This document shows, one piece after another, positions 4,179 through 10,041 of a stretch of 64,000 nucleotides of DNA. The DNA is taken from positions 930,001-994,000 of the forward strand of contig JBBPEB010000006.1 in NCBI GenBank assembly GCA_039096225.1, given 5' to 3'. Below the pieces are notes generated by a model, which saw only the letters and a list, made by a program, of their open reading frames with translations, did no database searches and was not told the DNA's origin. The stretch is from Blastocystis sp. Blastoise (taxonomy: Eukaryota; Protista; Bigyra: Opalinata). Numbering within the stretch: position 1 is the stretch's first letter; each line of letters starts with the position of its first letter. The position numbers and the translations under genes are program-made.

Positions 4179-7100
4179 ATGTTGAGACAAGCTGCTAAGT
4201 TATCTGTTAATAATGTTAGACACTTTAATACTATAAACAGCACTTCTGTACTACGTGCAGTTGCTTCTCGCTCTTTTGCAACATCTTCTATAAGAGCTGC
4301 TATCGATGGTAATGAAGCTGCTGCTCGTTCTGCTTATCTTGCTGCTGATACTGCTATGATTTTCCCTATCACTCCTTCTTCTCCTATGGGTGAACATTGT
4401 GATGCTTGGGCTACTGCTGGAAAGAAAAACCTTTTCAACGAAACAGTTTCTGTTCATGAACTTCAATCTGAAGCTGGTGCTATTGGTTCTCTTCATGGTG
4501 CTTTAATTGGTGGTCTTCTTGGTACTACTTTTTCATCTTCTCAAGGTTTACTTCTGATGTACCCAAATATGTATGTATCATACAAAATCTATATCTACAT
4601 ATCGTTAAACTTATATATTATTGATTTATATATGAATATAGGCTGAAAATTGCTGGTGAACTCTTACCTGCTGTTATTCATGTTGCTAGTAGATCCGTCA
4701 CTAAAGTAGGTGGTTGTTTATATGGTGACCACTCTGATGTCATGACTATGAGAAATGTATTTTTTAAATACCTATATATAGATTTATTAACATTTAAATA
4801 TAATAATATACGTTATTTATTGATTCTATATTTTAGACTGGATTTGCTTTCCTTTCTTCTCATAATGTCCAAGAAGCTCATGATCTTGCTATGGTTTCAC
4901 ATATTGCTGCGTATATATTGAAGTTTTATATATATATTTATAAATTAGTATACTAATATTTTGATTCTAATTATTTATTCTCTATAGTATTAATTCCAGT
5001 ATTCCTTTCCTTCATTTCTTTGATGGTTTTAGAGTTTCTCATAATGTATCTTCCATTGAACTTCTTCCTGAAGACAAAGTACGTACTATATTCCCTTATG
5101 AAAAGGCTCTTTATCATAAGAATCGTGGTTTAAATCCTACTCATCCTAATCATACTGGTATGATTCAAGGAGGAGATATGTGGATGCAAGCTAATCAAGC
5201 TGCTCAACCTTTCTATGATGCTGTTCCTAAACATGTTCAAAATGCTATGGATGCTGTTGCTTCTATTTCGGGTCGTCAATATCATTTATATGATTATGTT
5301 GGTGCTAAGGATGCTGAACGTGTCATTATTCTTATGGGTTCTGGTGCTCAAACTGCCGAAGAAACTGTTAATTATTTGAATAAGATGGGTGAAAAGGTTG
5401 GTGTTATTAAAGTACATCTCTTCAGACCTGTTTCCAGTGAATATTTCATGAAAGCTCTTCCTGCTTCTTGTAAGAAGGTTGCTGTCTTAGATAGAGTTCT
5501 TGAAGAATCTGCTATTGGTGGTCCTTTGTATATATCTATTCTTATTATATTATTATTTATTATTATTATTATTTTTTTTTAATTTTTTAAATTCAACATT
5601 ATTTTTATTAATTAATTACTTCCTCTAGATATCAAGATGTTGTTGGTATTATGAACGATGTTGAAAAGGATATTAAGGTTGTTGGTGGTGCCTATGGTGT
5701 TGGTGGTAAGGAATTTACTCCTTCTATGATCAAGGCTGTCTTTGATAACTTAAATCTCTCTAAACCTAAGAATAAATTTACTGTTGGTATTAATGATGAT
5801 GTTTGTCATTCTTCTCTTCCTCTTGGTCCCAACCTTGATACTCTTCCTTCTTCTACTAAACAATGTATTCTTTATGGTCTTGGTTCTGATGGTACTGTTG
5901 GTGCTTCTCAAGAAGCTATTAAACTTATTTCTGAGAATACTACACTTAATGCTCAAGGATACTTTGTCTTTGATGCTCATAAATCTGGTGGTTTAACTGT
6001 ATCTCATCTTAGATTTGGTCCTGAAAAGATTACTGCTGAATATGGTATTCAACACGCTGATTATATTGGTTGTCATTTATCTTCTTATGTTCATAAGTAC
6101 GACCTTTTAAAGAATATCAAACAAGGTGGTACCTTTGTTCTTAATGCTCCTTGGAAGACTGTTGAAGAACTTAATGCTAATCTTCCTAATAATCTTAAGA
6201 AGACCATTGCTGAAAAACACTTAAAATTCTATACTATTGATGCTACTAAGGTTGCTCAAGAAGTTGGTCTTAGACAACGTATTAATATGGTTATGCAAGC
6301 TGTTTTCTTCAAATTATCTAATGTTCTTCCTCAAGAAAAAGCTTCTGATCTTTTAGCTGCTAATATTAAGAAACGATATTACAAGAAAGGACAATCTGTT
6401 ATTGATATGAACATTAAGGCTATGCAAGAAGCTGGTGATCGTTTAGTTGAAATCACTTATCCTGAATCTTGGGCTTCTCTTGATAAGAAACCTCTTCGTG
6501 TTTTCCCTTCTTCTGTACCTGAATATTACAAAGATATCATGTATCCTACTCTTCTTCTCGAAGGTGATGATCTTCCCGTTTCCAAGATGATCCCTGGTGG
6601 TAGACATGTTTCTGAAACATCTAAATATGAGAAGAGAGGATTTGCTAATATTGTTCCTATTTGGAATAGTGAGACTTGTACTCAATGTAATACTTGTTCT
6701 ATCATGTGTCCTCATTCCGTCATTCGTCCTTTCCTTCTTGATTCTAATGAAGTAAAGAATGCTCCTAAGACTTTACAACATATTAATGCTATGGGTGATG
6801 AATTTGAAGGTCTTCAATATAGTCTTCAAGCTTCTGTTCTTGATTGTACTGGTTGTGAAGTATGTGCTAATGCTTGTCCTACTAAATCTCTTACTATGAC
6901 TTCTCTTTCTGAAGTATCTGATAGAGAAAGCTCTCAATGGGATTACTTAATGACCATTAAGAACAAGGGTAACCTTACTGATAAATATACTGTAAGAGGA
7001 TCTCAATTCCAAGCTCCTATGACTGAATTTAATGGTGCTTGTGCTGGCTGTGGTGAACCTCAATATGTTAAATTACTTACTCAATTATTAGGTGATCGTC

Positions 7101-10041
7101 TTGTTATTCCTAACGCTATGGGTTGTGCTATGGTTTGCCAAGGTTTATTTGGTTCTGTTCCTTTCACTAAGAATGAATATGGTCAAGGTCCTGCTTGGGG
7201 TTGTTCTTTATTTGAAGATAATGCTGAATGGGGTCTTGGTTTACATAAGGCTCATGTTTTGAATCGTGCTAAATTAGAAACAAATATTCATAACGCTCTT
7301 AATGACCAATCTGTGAAGATGTCTCCTGAACTTAAACAAACTCTTGAATCTTGGTTAGCTAACAAACAAGATGGTGATGCTTGTAGAGATATTCATCATA
7401 CTGCTACTCGTCTTTTAGAAACAGAGAAAAATAATAGTCCTGCTCTTAAGGCTGTTTATGATTATCTTGATGTTATGCCTAAGGTCAGTACTTGGGTTCT
7501 TGGAGGTGATGGTTGGGCTTATGATATTGGTTTCGGTGGTTTAGATCATGTTCTTGCTTCTGGCCAAAATGTCAAGGTACTCGTTTTAGATACTGAAATG
7601 TATGCTAATACTGGTGGTCAAGCTTCTAAAGCTACTCAAATGGGTGCTGTTGCTAAATTTGCTGCTGGTGGTAAGCCTCTTATGAAGAAAGATCTTGGTA
7701 AGATTGCTATGGGTTACAAGAACGTTTATGTAGCTTCTATTGCTATTGGTGCTGATATGAAACAAACTGTAAAGGCTTTATCTGAAGCTGATTCCTATGA
7801 TGGTCCCGCTATCGTTTTAGCTTATACTCCTTGTCAACAACATGGTTATCCTTCTAATCTTGGTATGTCTAAATTAGTTGATGTCACTAAACAAGCTGTT
7901 CAAACTGGTTACTGGCCTCTTTATAGATATGATCCTCGTAGAGCTACTGAAGGTAAGAATCCCTTCCAACTTGATTTCAAGAAGGTTAAAGGTGATGTTA
8001 AGGCTTATTTAGCTAATCAAAACAGATATCAAATTTTAATGAGAAACAATCCTGAAGTTGCTAAGAAGCTTCAAGAACAATTAGAAACTGAATTACGTTC
8101 AAGACATGAAGAAAGACTTCGTATGGCTATGACTGATAAAGAACTTCTTAAATATTTAGATAAGAGTAACAAACCTGCTGCTAAGAAGTATATATATATA
8201 TAATTTTTTTTTCTTTAGTTTTCCTATATTGTATATATATTTATTTATTATTCTTTTATAGACCTTCTGGTCCTTCTGCTACTAAGCCTACTGCTCCTCT
8301 TGAGACTGAACAAACTAATGCTTTATCTAGAGATATGTCTCAATGTATTGATTGTAAAGCCTGTGAAATGGCTTGTAAGAATGGTCCTGGATGTATTTTA
8401 TTTGTTATTATTATTTTATTATTATTATTATTTTATTATTATTATTATTTTATTTTTATTATTATTTTATTATTATTATTTTATTTTTATTATTATTTTA
8501 TTTTTATTATTATTTTATTTTTATTATTATTTTATTTTTATTATTTCTTTAAAAATATTTATCTTATAAATATCTATATAGGGTTTGAATATTCTTCGTG
8601 ATACTCCCTTCCAAGAAGGTCCTCCCGTACTTCCTGTGAATGGCCTTCCTCTTAAGGATACTAAATGTATTTCATGTGGACAATGTGCTGTTTCTTGTGG
8701 TACTGGTGCTATTGTTGAGAATAGTCATATTGAGAAAGTTAAGGCTGCTATGAAGGCTGGTAAGACTGTTGTTATTCAAACTGCTCCTGCTACACGTGTT
8801 GCTATTGCTGAAGAATTTGATGAACCTGCTGGTACTATTGGTACTAAGAAGATGGTCGGTGGATTAAAGAAATTAGGATTTAATTATGTTTTCGATACTA
8901 ATTGGGGTGCTGATTTAACTATTATGGAAGAAGGTACTGAATTATTAAATAGACTTGCTAACAAGAGTACTTCTAAATTCCCTATGTTCACTTCTTGTTG
9001 TCCTGGTTGGGTTAATCTTGTAGAAAAGGTATATCCTGAATTTATTCCTAATCTCTCTTCTTGTCGTTCTCCTCATATGATGTTAGGAGCTACTGTCAAA
9101 TCTTATTGGGCTCAAAAGAATAATCTTAAGAAGGAGAATGTATATGTTGTATCTTTAATGCCTTGTACTGCTAAGAAAGATGAAATTGAAAGAAGTCAAA
9201 TGTGGGATGGTGGTGAACATTGCGTTGATGCTGTTTTAACTACTCGTGAATTAGGTACTATGCTTAAGGAAGCTGGTGTTAAGAAATGGAGTGATCTTCA
9301 AGAAGCTGAGTTTGATAATCCTTTAGGTTCTTCTAGTGGTGCTGGTGATATATTTGGATCTTCAGGTGGTGTTATGGAAGCTGCTTTAAGAACTGCTTAT
9401 GAAGTGTCTACTGGAAAGAAATTAGATAAAGTCGATTTTAAGGCTGCTAGAGGTCTTGAAGGTGTAAAAGAATTCTCTGTTGATATGAATGGAAATGAAG
9501 TCAAATGTGCTGTTGTCCATTCTAAGAATATTCATGGTTTCTTAGATAAAGTCAAGAAGGGTGAAGTATATATTTGATATTTATTATTATATTATTATAA
9601 TTATATTCTCTTATTATATATAATATATATATATATATTTTTTTTCTCATAATAAATTTATTAAATTATAATGTTTAATATTAATATAGGCTCAATATGA
9701 TTTTGTTGAAGTAATGGCATGCCCTGGTGGTTGTATTAATGGAGGTGGTCAACCTAGAAGCAGAGATAAGAAGGCTGTTACTAAGAGAATGGAAGCTATT
9801 TATGAAATCGATAGTGGTAAGAAGATCAGAAAGTCTCATGAAAATCCTGATATTCAAGTATGTCTTGTTTATTTATTATTTTTTTTTATTAATATAATAT
9901 GATAATATATTGATGATGGATTCTTATTTTATTATTCTATAGACTATTTATAAGGAATTCTTTGAAAAACCCAATAGTCACAAAGCTCATGATCTTCTCC
10001 ATACTACCTACAAACAACAACCCATATCTCCTTTTGCTTAA
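4179..10041 (+). CDS. PFO-[FeFe]-hydrogenase fusion protein (predicted 1685 aa), organelle-targeted
   Basis: Exons 4179-4570, 4642-4756, 4837-4910, 4988-5527, 5629-8187, 8262-8388, 8582-9565, 9690-9857 and 9943-10041 sum to 5058 nt with no internal stop. All PFO motifs are present. The GT-AG intron 8188-8261 joins PFO in frame to linker [25 protein letters not shown], then [11 protein letters not shown] and [13 protein letters not shown]-cluster motifs [17 protein letters not shown] and [16 protein letters not shown], and C-terminal KSHENP...AHDLLHTTY. Intron 6 needs a GG donor at 8389, or a weak GT at 8404 that adds 5 aa. Confidence 0.88.

What the first reader, a model, noticed from the sequence alone, without database searches (positions are those of the whole stretch)
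4179..10041. Single-polypeptide PFO-[FeFe]-hydrogenase fusion targeted to the mitochondrion-related organelle
Seen: the PFO frame enters a canonical GTATAT...TATAG intron (8188-8261). Removing it continues in frame (AA+A = Lys) into a low-complexity linker ([18 protein letters not shown]), two CxxCxxCxxxC motifs and a full H-domain with all three H-cluster signatures. The hydrogenase part has no presequence or promoter space of its own, and codon style is the same on both sides. Established: PFO and HydA are normally separate enzymes coupled by a diffusible ferredoxin. The eukaryotic PFO fusion I know is PNO (PFO plus flavodoxin/NADPH-cytochrome P450 reductase); I do not know of a characterised PFO-HydA fusion, but I could not search. 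Inference: TPP, three PFO [4Fe-4S], two hydrogenase [4Fe-4S] and the H-cluster could form a tethered wire converting 2-oxoacid + CoA to acyl-CoA + CO2 + H2 without free ferredoxin. This would also be of interest for biohydrogen engineering.
Basis: partly seen in the sequence, partly recalled or inferred. Interest (0 to 1): 0.96.

Follow-up and report, generated by a model that had tools for sequence, protein, structure and literature searches.

The report
Natural PFO-hydrogenase fusion gene in Blastocystis
A gut protist from a tortoise carries one nine-exon gene that joins the enzyme that oxidises pyruvate (PFO) to an iron-only hydrogenase in a single 1690-residue protein, an arrangement I found in no other database protein or paper, although it is not yet shown that the protein makes hydrogen.

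Summary
Window 4179-10041 (+) is one nine-exon gene of a tortoise Blastocystis (GenBank 'Blastocystis sp. Blastoise'). A complete PFO (residues 41-1209) runs through a canonical 74-nt GT-AG intron (8188-8261) and a Pro/Ala/Lys linker into a short [FeFe]-hydrogenase with two [4Fe-4S] motifs and all three H-cluster motifs.

The spliced reading is identical to a deposited, unnamed GenBank model (KAK8811497.1, 'hypothetical protein', 1690 aa). That model comes from an annotation pipeline described as keeping only RNA-seq-supported introns. The genome paper never mentions hydrogenase, pyruvate or fusion.

This is the only canonical hydrogenase H-domain found in the 33-Mb genome. Its nearest free-standing relative, the Blastocystis ST4 HydA-flavodoxin (63% identity), has an N-terminal [2Fe-2S] module and a C-terminal flavodoxin instead of PFO. 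No other PFO-hydrogenase architecture appeared in the protein searches, and none in the papers searched.

Weak points:
- The exon 6/7 donor is atypical.
- HydG and HydF were not found, as already published for human Blastocystis, so hydrogen production is unproven.

Estimates: real fusion about 0.85-0.9; ferredoxin-free pyruvate-to-H2 wire about 0.3-0.4. Novelty: new variant of a known kind. Earlier notes of this scan on this same stretch raise related ideas; none comes from other DNA.

The parts
3760..4178 (.). 419-bp spacer between the start codons of two head-to-head PFO genes; presumed shared promoter region
   Evidence: The minus-strand PFO paralogue (P0484, 1221 aa) starts at 3759 and the fusion gene starts at 4179. 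The spacer is 28% GC.
4179..4298 (+). First 40 codons: N-terminal extension, probably a targeting presequence for the mitochondrion-related organelle
   Evidence: Solved PFORs align only from residue 41 (6cin). The 40 residues hold 5 Arg, 1 Lys, 7 Ser, 6 Ala and no Asp or Glu. Localisation was not tested.
4179..4570 (+). Exon 1 (PFO domain I, start)
   Evidence: POR_N 6.5e-22; 100% match to P0271 residues 1-131.
4642..4756 (+). Exon 2 (PFO domain I)
   Evidence: POR_N 1.6e-7; flanked by GTATGT..ATATAG and GTATTT..TTTTAG introns.
4837..4910 (+). Exon 3 (PFO domain I)
   Evidence: 100% match to P0271 residues 170-194.
4988..5527 (+). Exon 4 (PFO domains I-II)
   Evidence: POR_N 3.5e-14 and PFOR_II 1.3e-10.
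5629..8187 (+). Exon 5: PFO domains II-VI. It carries the Cys ligands of three [4Fe-4S] clusters (residues 724-734 = 6677-6709; 780-790 = 6845-6877; 845, 848, 873, 1109) and a GDG triplet at residues 1000-1002 (7505-7513) inside the TPP_enzyme_C match. It ends in the C-terminal tail and the start of the linker.
   Evidence: POR, EKR, Fer4 and TPP_enzyme_C. All 12 cysteines that are invariant in 24 other PFORs are present. Residues 41-1206 align end to end with Moorella PFOR 6cin.
8188..8261 (+). Intron 5, the joint between the PFO and hydrogenase halves. If it is retained, the frame stops at TAA 8201-8203 after KKYIYI.
   Evidence: GTATAT..TTATAG, 74 nt, 11% GC; the phase is kept across it (AA|A = Lys1227). 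It is used in the deposited model.
8262..8403 (+). Exon 6: linker (residues 1223-1242, coding 8174-8187 plus 8262-8307), then the first [4Fe-4S] motif of the hydrogenase (Cys1255-1265)
   Evidence: Fer4 1.2e-4. The stretch 8262-8334, upstream of any ATG, is 42% GC, which is coding-like. Homology to the free-standing ST4 HydA starts at residue 1243.
8404..8581 (+). Intron 6, a 178-nt microsatellite-like T/A repeat (3% GC) with the atypical donor GTTATT
   Evidence: This donor is the only canonical in-frame choice that keeps the conserved GLNIL segment.
8582..9565 (+). Exon 7: second [4Fe-4S] motif (Cys1303-1313) and most of the H-domain, with motifs L1 TSCCPGW (8990-9010) and L2 MPCTAKKDE (9158-9184)
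   Evidence: Fe_hyd_lg_C 1.4e-79; motifs; 63% identity to ST4 HydA.
9690..9857 (+). Exon 8: H-cluster motif L3 [16 protein letters not shown] (9708-9755) and the start of the small-subunit-like tail
   Evidence: Fe_hyd_lg_C and Fe_hyd_SSU; motif.
9943..10041 (+). Exon 9: end of the small-subunit-like tail and stop codon TAA (10039-10041)
   Evidence: Fe_hyd_SSU 2.5e-11; 100% match to P0271 residues 1659-1690.

Best explanation
Window 4179-10041 is a single nuclear gene of a tortoise-associated Blastocystis. Its mRNA, after removal of eight GT-AG introns, encodes a 1690-residue (185 kDa) protein with four parts:
- an N-terminal organelle-targeting presequence of about 40 residues;
- a complete single-subunit pyruvate:ferredoxin oxidoreductase with a TPP site and three [4Fe-4S] clusters;
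- a flexible spacer of about 33 residues. It comprises a 13-residue tail shared with the Blastocystis PFO paralogues and a new 20-residue Pro/Ala/Lys-rich linker;
- a short group-A-like [FeFe]-hydrogenase with two accessory [4Fe-4S] clusters, the H-domain and a small-subunit-like tail.

Shown: the gene structure, the domain content, the conserved ligands and the uniqueness of the architecture.

Inferred: the protein is imported into the mitochondrion-related organelle. There PFO oxidises pyruvate (or another 2-oxoacid) plus CoA to acyl-CoA and CO2. The electrons leave the distal PFO cluster directly into the tethered ferredoxin-like F-domain of the hydrogenase half, of the same or the partner subunit of the PFO dimer, instead of through a free ferredoxin.

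The final acceptor is most simply the proton, giving H2. This last step is the least secure, because the usual H-cluster maturases were not found.
For: - Exon and phase structure, and identity to the deposited protein P0271 = KAK8811497.1.
- That model comes from a pipeline tuned to accept only introns supported by at least 3 RNA-seq reads (PMC10690189).
- Pfam domains follow the expected order, exon by exon.
- The PFO half aligns end to end with solved PFORs, and the hydrogenase half with solved HydA chains.
- All 12 PFO cluster cysteines and all hydrogenase motifs are present.
- Codon usage is the same in both halves, and the stretch upstream of the first possible hydrogenase ATG has coding-like GC.
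- Homology to the free-standing ST4 HydA begins 9 residues upstream of that ATG, so the ATG is an internal residue, not a start.
- It is the only full H-domain found in the genome.
- Relative to its closest free-standing relative, the hydrogenase half has lost exactly the two modules that would otherwise feed it electrons: the N-terminal [2Fe-2S] module and the C-terminal flavodoxin. That fits PFO having taken over the role.
- Human Blastocystis PFO and HydA carry targeting peptides, and HydA was localised to the organelle (PMC2428068; PMC5608401).
Against:
- The preprint itself warns that transcript assemblers can merge neighbouring genes.
- The donor of intron 6 is atypical (GTTATT). A consensus-like GTATTT 11 nt upstream would break the frame.
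- No orthologue from another strain or species was available to show that the fusion is conserved.
- HydG, HydE and the BATS domain gave no hit in the genome, and HydF gave only P-loop hits.
- Blastocystis ST1 is reported to lack HydF and HydG and to show no PFO or hydrogenase activity.
- Cluster-to-cluster distances could not be modelled (one search was not folded).
Confidence: 0.6

Rival explanations
1. The fusion protein is real, but the hydrogenase half does not make H2. Without HydF and HydG it would carry only its [4Fe-4S] clusters. It would then act as an electron-transfer or electron-storage module passing PFO electrons to another acceptor, or as a redox sensor.
For: No HydG, HydE or BATS domain was found in the genome, and HydF gave only weak P-loop matches. 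The five radical-SAM loci found are of other kinds, such as lipoyl synthase, MiaB-like and TYW1-like. Gentekaki et al. 2017 report that ST1 lacks HydF and HydG, that PFO and hydrogenase activity could not be detected, and propose an alternative acceptor.
Against: All residues of motifs L1-L3, including the proton-relay cysteine of TSCCP, are kept at 63% identity to the ST4 enzyme. By contrast, a second hydrogenase-like gene in the same genome (contig C32) has let these motifs decay. The six-frame HMM search can miss genes cut into short exons, and an unchecked first-stage note claims a HydE-like gene elsewhere. From general knowledge, not tested here: Giardia and Entamoeba also lack these maturases, and H2 production has been reported for Giardia.
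Confidence: 0.3
2. These are two separate genes wrongly merged. PFO ends at TAA 8201-8203. The hydrogenase is transcribed on its own and starts at ATG 8335. The intron is spliced rarely or never.
For: An in-frame stop lies 14 nt into the intron. Paralogous PFOs end at the equivalent place, at 1221-1222 aa. The preprint notes that assemblers can merge adjacent transcripts. I could not inspect reads.
Against: - Only 131 nt would separate the stop from the ATG, whereas the reported median intergenic length in tortoise isolates is 645-719 bp.
- The stretch 8262-8334 is 42% GC like exons, whereas true non-coding DNA here is 3-28% GC.
- Homology to ST4 HydA extends upstream of the ATG, which is an internal Met in ST4.
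- A protein starting at Met1252 would have no presequence and only three residues before the first cluster cysteine.
- The intron has the same boundaries, size and composition as the seven others.
- The deposited model, from a pipeline that demands read-supported junctions, uses it.
Confidence: 0.08
3. Assembly chimera: PFO and hydrogenase sequences from different loci were joined at a low-complexity stretch.
For: Intron 6 is a 178-nt T/A microsatellite, a kind of sequence at which assemblies can err. The tortoise genomes are reported to be 12% low-complexity.
Against: Exon 6 lies on the PFO side of the microsatellite, is joined to PFO only by the ordinary 74-nt intron 5, and already contains the first hydrogenase Fe-S motif. 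Exon 7 continues the alignment to ST4 HydA at the right residue. Codon usage is identical in the two halves. The contig is a 1.38-Mb long-read contig. No second hydrogenase or matching PFO 3' end exists elsewhere in the genome to be the 'true' partner.
Confidence: 0.02

Closest known systems
Single-subunit homodimeric pyruvate:ferredoxin oxidoreductase (Moorella thermoacetica 6CIN, Desulfovibrio africanus 1B0P) and the Blastocystis organellar PFO paralogues (P0001, P0002, P0484)
   Same: Residues 41-1209 align end to end. The domain order is the same, all three [4Fe-4S] sites and the TPP-binding domain (with a GDG triplet) are present, and the part is 79-81% identical to paralogue P0001.
   Different: Free PFORs stop at the equivalent of residues 1209-1222 and hand electrons to a diffusible ferredoxin or flavodoxin. 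Here the chain continues for 468 more residues into a hydrogenase.
Blastocystis [FeFe]-hydrogenase with C-terminal flavodoxin (ST4 XP_014527296.1 = P0470; described for ST1 by Stechmann et al. 2008)
   Same: It is the closest relative of the hydrogenase half: 63% identity over 443 residues, covering the two-cluster F-domain, the H-domain and the small-subunit-like tail.
   Different: The ST4 protein has its own N-terminus with a [2Fe-2S] Fer2_4 module and a C-terminal flavodoxin. The window protein has neither and carries PFO in front instead. In human-type contigs the PFO gene is not followed by a hydrogenase.
Pyruvate:NADP+ oxidoreductase (PNO: PFO fused to a CysJ-like flavodoxin/FAD/NADPH reductase) and other PFO fusions seen in the searches (PFO+flavodoxin, PFO+GltD-like)
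   Same: The principle is the same: the electron acceptor is fused to the C-terminus of PFO (P0283, P0052, P0275). The same genome also appears to hold a PNO-like gene on contig C3.
   Different: In those fusions the acceptor is a flavoprotein that reduces NADP+ or a similar carrier. Here it is a hydrogenase, a terminal enzyme, so the fusion would close the whole pathway in one chain.
Hydrogenase fusions of anaerobic eukaryotes (HydA-CysJ of Trichomonas, Stygiella and Pygsuia; HydA-NuoE/F of Nyctotherus) and the gene adjacency of 2-oxoacid:ferredoxin oxidoreductase with HydA in DPANN archaea
   Same: HydA is often fused or linked to its redox partner. Oxidoreductase genes lie next to HydA genes in some archaeal MAGs (PMC11216029).
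   Different: None of these is a PFO-HydA single polypeptide. Among the 120 best long proteins with a HydA domain, only the window's own protein carries PFO domains.
Engineered PFOR-ferredoxin-hydrogenase circuits (Agapakis et al. 2010, PMC2847965)
   Same: The aim is the same as the inferred mechanism: insulate electron flow from pyruvate to H2 by bringing the partners together. This rests on that paper's abstract as shown; I did not read the paper.
   Different: That system is synthetic, and I did not check which partners its constructs join. The window's protein is a natural fusion without a separate ferredoxin.

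Membership tests
Single-subunit pyruvate:ferredoxin oxidoreductase | Domains I, II, III, (IV/EKR), V (2x[4Fe-4S]) and VI (TPP binding) in this order in one chain | tested here: met
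   Pfam finds them exon by exon in order. Residues 41-1206 align to positions 5-1168 of 6cin.
Single-subunit pyruvate:ferredoxin oxidoreductase | Twelve cysteine ligands of three [4Fe-4S] clusters, and the TPP-binding domain | tested here: met
   Cys 724/727/730/734, 780/783/786/790 and 845/848/873/1109 fall in columns that are 100% Cys in 24 other PFORs. TPP_enzyme_C matches and a GDG triplet lies at 1000-1002. A search for the fuller GDG...NN pattern found no match, so the TPP motif is only partly verified.
Single-subunit pyruvate:ferredoxin oxidoreductase | CoA-dependent oxidative decarboxylation of pyruvate with a low-potential acceptor | not testable with these tools
   This needs an enzyme assay. 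Substrate specificity (pyruvate versus other 2-oxoacids) was not examined.
Group A-type [FeFe]-hydrogenase, short form with a two-cluster F-domain | H-cluster motifs L1 TSCCPxW, L2 MPCxxKxxE and L3 ExMACxxGCxxGGGQP | tested here: met
   TSCCPGW at 1411, MPCTAKKDE at 1467 and [16 protein letters not shown] at 1609. Fe_hyd_lg_C scores 1.4e-79.
Group A-type [FeFe]-hydrogenase, short form with a two-cluster F-domain | Two CxxCxxCxxxC motifs ahead of the H-domain, and a small-subunit-like C-terminus | tested here: met
   Motifs at 1255-1265 and 1303-1313. Fe_hyd_SSU matches exons 8 and 9. Residues 1240-1685 align to solved HydA chains.
Group A-type [FeFe]-hydrogenase, short form with a two-cluster F-domain | H-cluster maturases HydE, HydF and HydG encoded in the same genome | tested here: not met
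   TIGR03955 (HydG), TIGR03956 (HydE) and PF06968 (BATS) gave no candidate. TIGR03918 (HydF) gave only 24-44-bit P-loop matches against a 325-bit cut-off. The radical-SAM loci found are other enzymes. Caveat: the search works exon by exon and can miss genes split into short exons. An untested first-stage note claims a HydE-like gene.
Group A-type [FeFe]-hydrogenase, short form with a two-cluster F-domain | H2 evolution or uptake activity | not testable with these tools
   Activity has not been demonstrated for any Blastocystis (PMC2428068, PMC5608401).
Pyruvate:NADP+ oxidoreductase (PNO) | C-terminal flavodoxin / FAD / NADPH-binding (CysJ-like) module after PFO | tested here: not met
   No Flavodoxin_1, FAD_binding_1 or NAD_binding_1 match on exons 6-9. 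The C-terminal module is a hydrogenase.
Blastocystis-type HydA-flavodoxin | N-terminal [2Fe-2S] module and C-terminal flavodoxin around the HydA core | tested here: not met
   The alignment to P0470 covers only its residues 150-585. Fer2_4 and Flavodoxin_1 are found in P0470 but not in the window protein. No flavodoxin remnant lies downstream of 10041.
Proteins imported into mitochondrion-related organelles | N-terminal presequence: an extension relative to bacterial homologues, rich in Arg, Ser and Ala and free of acidic residues | tested here: met
   The 40-residue extension holds 5 Arg, 1 Lys, 7 Ser, 6 Ala and no Asp or Glu. No predictor or localisation experiment was available, so import itself is untested.

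The most novel reading that the evidence does not exclude
The protein is a self-contained 'pyruvate:proton oxidoreductase'. One organelle-targeted polypeptide (as a dimer) would turn pyruvate plus CoA into acetyl-CoA, CO2 and H2 through an internal chain of six metal clusters, with no free ferredoxin. It is the only canonical hydrogenase of the organism. It would also be matured without HydF and HydG, which would imply an unknown route of H-cluster assembly in eukaryotes.
Probability: 0.3. Interest if true: 0.88.

Novelty: new variant of a known kind. Interest (0 to 1): 0.72.

Why it matters
PFO and [FeFe]-hydrogenase are the two signature enzymes of hydrogenosome-type metabolism. In every characterised case they are separate proteins linked by a diffusible ferredoxin or flavodoxin. 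A natural end-to-end fusion matters in four ways.

1. It is 'Rosetta-stone' evidence that the two enzymes really work together in Blastocystis. There, neither activity nor hydrogen production has been demonstrated, and their roles are openly debated.
2. It gives a directly testable object: one gene to express, mature and assay with and without ferredoxin. That test bears on whether electrons can pass from PFO clusters straight into a hydrogenase.
3. It offers a natural template for insulated pyruvate-to-hydrogen modules, which so far exist only as engineered circuits.
4. Because HydF and HydG seem absent, an active enzyme would point to an unknown maturation route.

If the hydrogenase half proves inactive, the protein still shows how a hydrogenase scaffold can be reused as an electron-transfer module.

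Tried and rejected
- **Reads.** There is no direct read evidence in this report.
- **Docking.** This gives no verdict and is no evidence either way.
- **P0001 context.** The look-up of encoding contigs for P0001 returned nothing, because records of the window's own genome are withheld.
- **Representatives search with exon 7.** No hit had the hydrogenase domain behind a PFO-sized N-terminus. The top hit, P0121 (4122 aa), is a seven-fold hydrogenase array without PFO.
- **Metagenome scan with exon 7.** It gave 80 loci at 56% identity or less, mostly with prokaryote-like context. None has a PFO within the 10-kb flanks. No tortoise-clade orthologue was recovered, so conservation of the fusion remains untested.
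- **ESM Atlas look-alikes.** Only ordinary PFOR clusters appeared.
- **Origin of the fusion.** The paralogous head-to-head PFO pair on contig C24 has no hydrogenase and no shared synteny downstream, so the origin stays unresolved.
- **Alternative splice choices at exon 6/7.**
  - Donor 8393 with acceptor 8581 shifts the frame into a stop.
  - Donor 8393 with acceptor 8618 deletes a conserved 13-residue segment.
  - A GG donor at 8389 would align without a gap to the ST4 enzyme and give the modal 32-residue spacing between the two Cys motifs, but it is non-canonical.
  - I kept the deposited GT-AG choice (8404/8581).
Rejected. The nearest proteins are all from Blastocystis.
- **Supplementary tables of the genome preprint.** They are not held.
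- **Spliced model.** All searches were made exon by exon by reference, or with the database record P0271. In one local script the exons were concatenated, only to test equality with P0271 and to compute codon statistics, and nothing of it was printed.

Full report
**What the window is.**
The best protein matches to the large PFO exon are all from Blastocystis. The top ones carry the GenBank name 'Blastocystis sp. Blastoise'. The window is contig C14, positions 930001-994000, of a 33.3-Mb, 34-contig genome. Size, contig number and about 23% GC fit strain Rus-B, isolated from a Russian tortoise and described in the preprint PMC10690189. That paper reports long, variable introns, 645-719-bp median intergenic spacers and 21-23% GC for the tortoise isolates.

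**Check of the observation.**
- Three-frame reading and the raw sequence give nine exons: 4179-4570, 4642-4756, 4837-4910, 4988-5527, 5629-8187, 8262-8403, 8582-9565, 9690-9857 and 9943-10041.
- All eight introns are GT-AG, 71-178 nt long and 3-18% GC. The exons are 33-40% GC.
- Intron 5 (8188-8261, GTATAT..TTATAG, 74 nt) is the joint. Exon 5 ends in AA and exon 6 begins with A. The frame then runs on through KPAAKK|[28 protein letters not shown] into the first CxxCxxCxxxC motif.
- Pfam, run exon by exon by reference, gives POR_N, PFOR_II, POR, EKR, Fer4 and TPP_enzyme_C on exons 1-5. It gives Fer4, Fe_hyd_lg_C (1.4e-79) and Fe_hyd_SSU on exons 6-9.

**An independent model already exists.**
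- A search with the paralogue P0001 as query was long enough to admit candidates of 1690 residues. It returned P0271, 'hypothetical protein WA158_003231 [Blastocystis sp. Blastoise]', 1690 aa, carrying both the PFOR and the hydrogenase Pfam domains.
- tblastn of P0271 on the window is 100% identical on every exon.
- A local concatenation of my nine exons equals P0271 residue for residue.
- Its accession is KAK8811497.1.
- The preprint says that gene models were chosen to have strictly RNA-seq-supported introns, with at least 3 reads per junction, from poly-A RNA. This is indirect but independent support for splicing of 8187|8262.
- The main text of the preprint contains no occurrence of 'hydrogenase', 'pyruvate', 'fusion' or 'mitochondri'. 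The fusion is deposited but not described.

**Anatomy of the protein.**
- Solved PFORs (6cin, 1b0p, 7plm) align to residues 41/42-1206/1210. Solved HydA chains align to 1240/1248-1685.
- The first 40 residues are an extension with 5 Arg, 1 Lys, 7 Ser, 6 Ala and no acidic residue. This is the usual make-up of a mitochondrial-type presequence. Human Blastocystis PFO and HydA have such peptides, and HydA was localised to the organelle.
- In an alignment with 24 other PFORs, all twelve cluster cysteines are present. A GDG triplet (1000-1002) lies inside the TPP-binding-domain match, although the fuller GDG...NN pattern was not matched.
- Free PFORs end at the equivalent of residues 1209-1212, and the Blastocystis paralogue P0001 at 1222.
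- Homology to the closest free-standing hydrogenase begins at residue 1243.
- The spacer is thus about 33 residues. Residues 1223-1242 ([20 protein letters not shown]) have no counterpart on either side.
- The hydrogenase half has both F-domain motifs and intact motifs L1, L2 and L3.

**Why two separate genes are unlikely.**
- If intron 5 were retained, PFO would stop at TAA 8201-8203.
- The only possible start for a separate hydrogenase is ATG 8335 (Met1252), 131 nt further on. The reported median intergenic length in these genomes is above 600 bp.
- The 73 nt upstream of that ATG (8262-8334) are 42% GC like exons. Introns and flanks are 3-28% GC.
- The alignment to the ST4 enzyme starts nine residues upstream of Met1252, which matches an internal Met of ST4 (RDMSKC versus RDMSQC).
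- A protein starting there would have no presequence.
- Codon usage of the two halves correlates at 0.96.
- A chimera is also unlikely. The first hydrogenase Fe-S motif lies in exon 6, on the PFO side of the microsatellite intron, and is separated from PFO only by the ordinary intron 5.

**The weakest joint.**
- Intron 6 (8404-8581) is a T/A microsatellite with the donor GTTATT.
- A consensus-like GTATTT at 8393 would shift the frame into a stop within six codons.
- A non-canonical GG at 8389 would remove the five residues GCILF. It would then align without a gap to ST4 and give the modal 32-residue spacing seen in 92 of about 190 homologues.
- Exons 7-9 are intact, conserved and have no start of their own, so some in-frame splice must occur. 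Which one can only be read from RNA.
- This affects five loop residues, not the fusion itself.

**Context in the genome and in relatives.**
- The H-domain family search finds one full match in the genome, namely this gene.
- A search with the ST4 protein adds only a divergent gene on contig C32. That gene has the ST4 architecture ([2Fe-2S] module, HydA-like core, flavodoxin) at 33-37% identity. Its motifs are decayed: TSSCP and ACPEGCIGSAGFG.
- The canonical hydrogenase of this organism is therefore the fused one.
- The ST4 relative (P0470, 762 aa) has Fer2_4 at 32-107 and Flavodoxin_1 at 615-752. The window protein aligns only to residues 150-585. So both accessory electron-transfer modules are gone and PFO stands in front.
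- In human-type Blastocystis contigs the PFO gene is followed by unrelated genes on the other strand. The ST4-type HydA-flavodoxin contig has no PFO upstream.
- The genome holds about six PFO-like genes, including two head-to-head pairs: the window's, and P0002/P0001 on contig C24. The C24 pair has no hydrogenase.

**How rare the architecture is.**
- Among the 120 best of 824 long proteins (930-2957 aa) that match the hydrogenase half, only P0271 has PFOR domains. The others are fusions of HydA with CysJ, NuoE/F, GltD-like or WD40 modules.
- Among the 120 best matches to PFO, only P0271 has a hydrogenase domain.
- None of 80 metagenome loci with related hydrogenases has a PFO within 10 kb.
- The Atlas look-alikes are plain PFORs.
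- These lists are truncated, so rarer cases cannot be excluded.
- Full-text searches for PFO/PFOR-hydrogenase fusions found none.
- A November 2026 review of PFOR diversity states that all known eukaryotic PFORs are of the one-subunit type. None of the passages I read, which held its hits for 'hydrogenase', 'fusion' and 'fused', describes a hydrogenase fusion.
- A survey of [FeFe]-hydrogenase diversity notes only gene adjacency of 2-oxoacid oxidoreductases and HydA in DPANN archaea.

**Function.**
- Shown: every ligand needed for TPP-dependent oxidation, three PFO clusters, two F-clusters and the H-cluster is encoded in one frame.
- Inferred: the F-domain of the hydrogenase is a bacterial-ferredoxin-like 2x[4Fe-4S] module, the same kind of protein that PFO normally reduces. 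It hangs on a 33-residue tether and can plausibly dock at the distal PFO cluster of its own or the partner subunit, replacing free ferredoxin.
- The loss of the [2Fe-2S] and flavodoxin modules present in the ST4 relative fits this.
- I could not model the geometry, because the whole protein exceeds the folding limit and the complex job was not folded.
- Whether protons are the final acceptor is open. HydG, HydE and the BATS domain gave no candidate, and HydF gave only P-loop matches. The five radical-SAM loci are other enzymes.
- This agrees with the report that Blastocystis ST1 lacks HydF and HydG and shows no measurable PFO or hydrogenase activity (PMC5608401).
- The six-frame search can miss genes cut into short exons, and an unchecked first-stage note claims a HydE-like gene elsewhere in the genome.
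- The intact catalytic motifs, set against the decayed ones in the C32 paralogue, argue that catalysis is still under selection.

**Verdict.**
- The gene and its fused reading frame are real with a probability of about 0.85-0.9.
- Organelle targeting is probable.
- Direct PFO-to-hydrogenase electron transfer is the natural reading of the architecture (about 0.6).
- Ferredoxin-free H2 production is possible but unproven (about 0.3-0.4).
- It is a new domain architecture built from two well-known enzymes. It is present in GenBank as an unnamed model and, as far as I could search, undescribed.

**Limits.**
- No orthologues were available from other tortoise isolates.
- The hit lists are truncated.
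- The spliced model was searched exon by exon or through the database record P0271.

Noticed in passing
window 1-3759 (minus strand): A second PFO gene lies head to head with the fusion gene, 419 bp between the two start codons. Its product is P0484 (1221 aa, plain PFO domains) and it runs off the window start. It has no C-terminal fusion. A paralogous head-to-head pair (P0002/P0001) lies on contig C24, about 3 kb apart.
   Followed up: partly
G000:C32:213324-216535 (L088 1324-4535), plus strand: A second, divergent hydrogenase-like gene has the architecture of the human-Blastocystis enzyme ([2Fe-2S] module, HydA-like core, C-terminal flavodoxin). It is only 33-37% identical and its H-cluster motifs are decayed (TSSCPAT, TSCVAAKNS, ACPEGCIGSAGFG). 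It may be a non-catalytic or sensory derivative.
   Followed up: partly
window 8404-8581: Intron 6 is almost pure T/A (3% GC) and built of TTATTATTATTTTA-like units. Its donor is GTTATT, and a consensus-like GTATTT lies 11 nt upstream that would break the frame. This could allow alternative or error-prone splicing.
   Followed up: partly
window 10352-10440 (+): ARAGORN calls an 89-nt tRNA gene of undetermined type (anticodon given as 'ta' at position 35) about 310 nt downstream of the hydrogenase stop. Its length suggests a tRNA with an intron; the type was not worked out.
   Followed up: no
G000:C3:1273755-1277944 (minus strand): A 1690-codon open frame carries POR_N and a flavodoxin-like C-terminal part, probably a PNO-type PFO fusion. 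The equal length to the window protein is a coincidence.
   Followed up: no
whole genome G000: No HydG, HydE or BATS-domain match and only P-loop matches to HydF. The radical-SAM loci found look like lipoyl synthase (C29), two MiaB/CDKAL1-like genes (C18, C22), a TYW1-like gene (C2) and an archaeal-type AmmeMemoRadiSam-like gene (C16).
   Followed up: partly
P0121 (from; not in the window): A 4122-residue database protein holds seven tandem [FeFe]-hydrogenase H-domains, three flavodoxin domains and one FAD-binding domain. It is either a merged tandem gene array or an unusual poly-hydrogenase.
   Followed up: no
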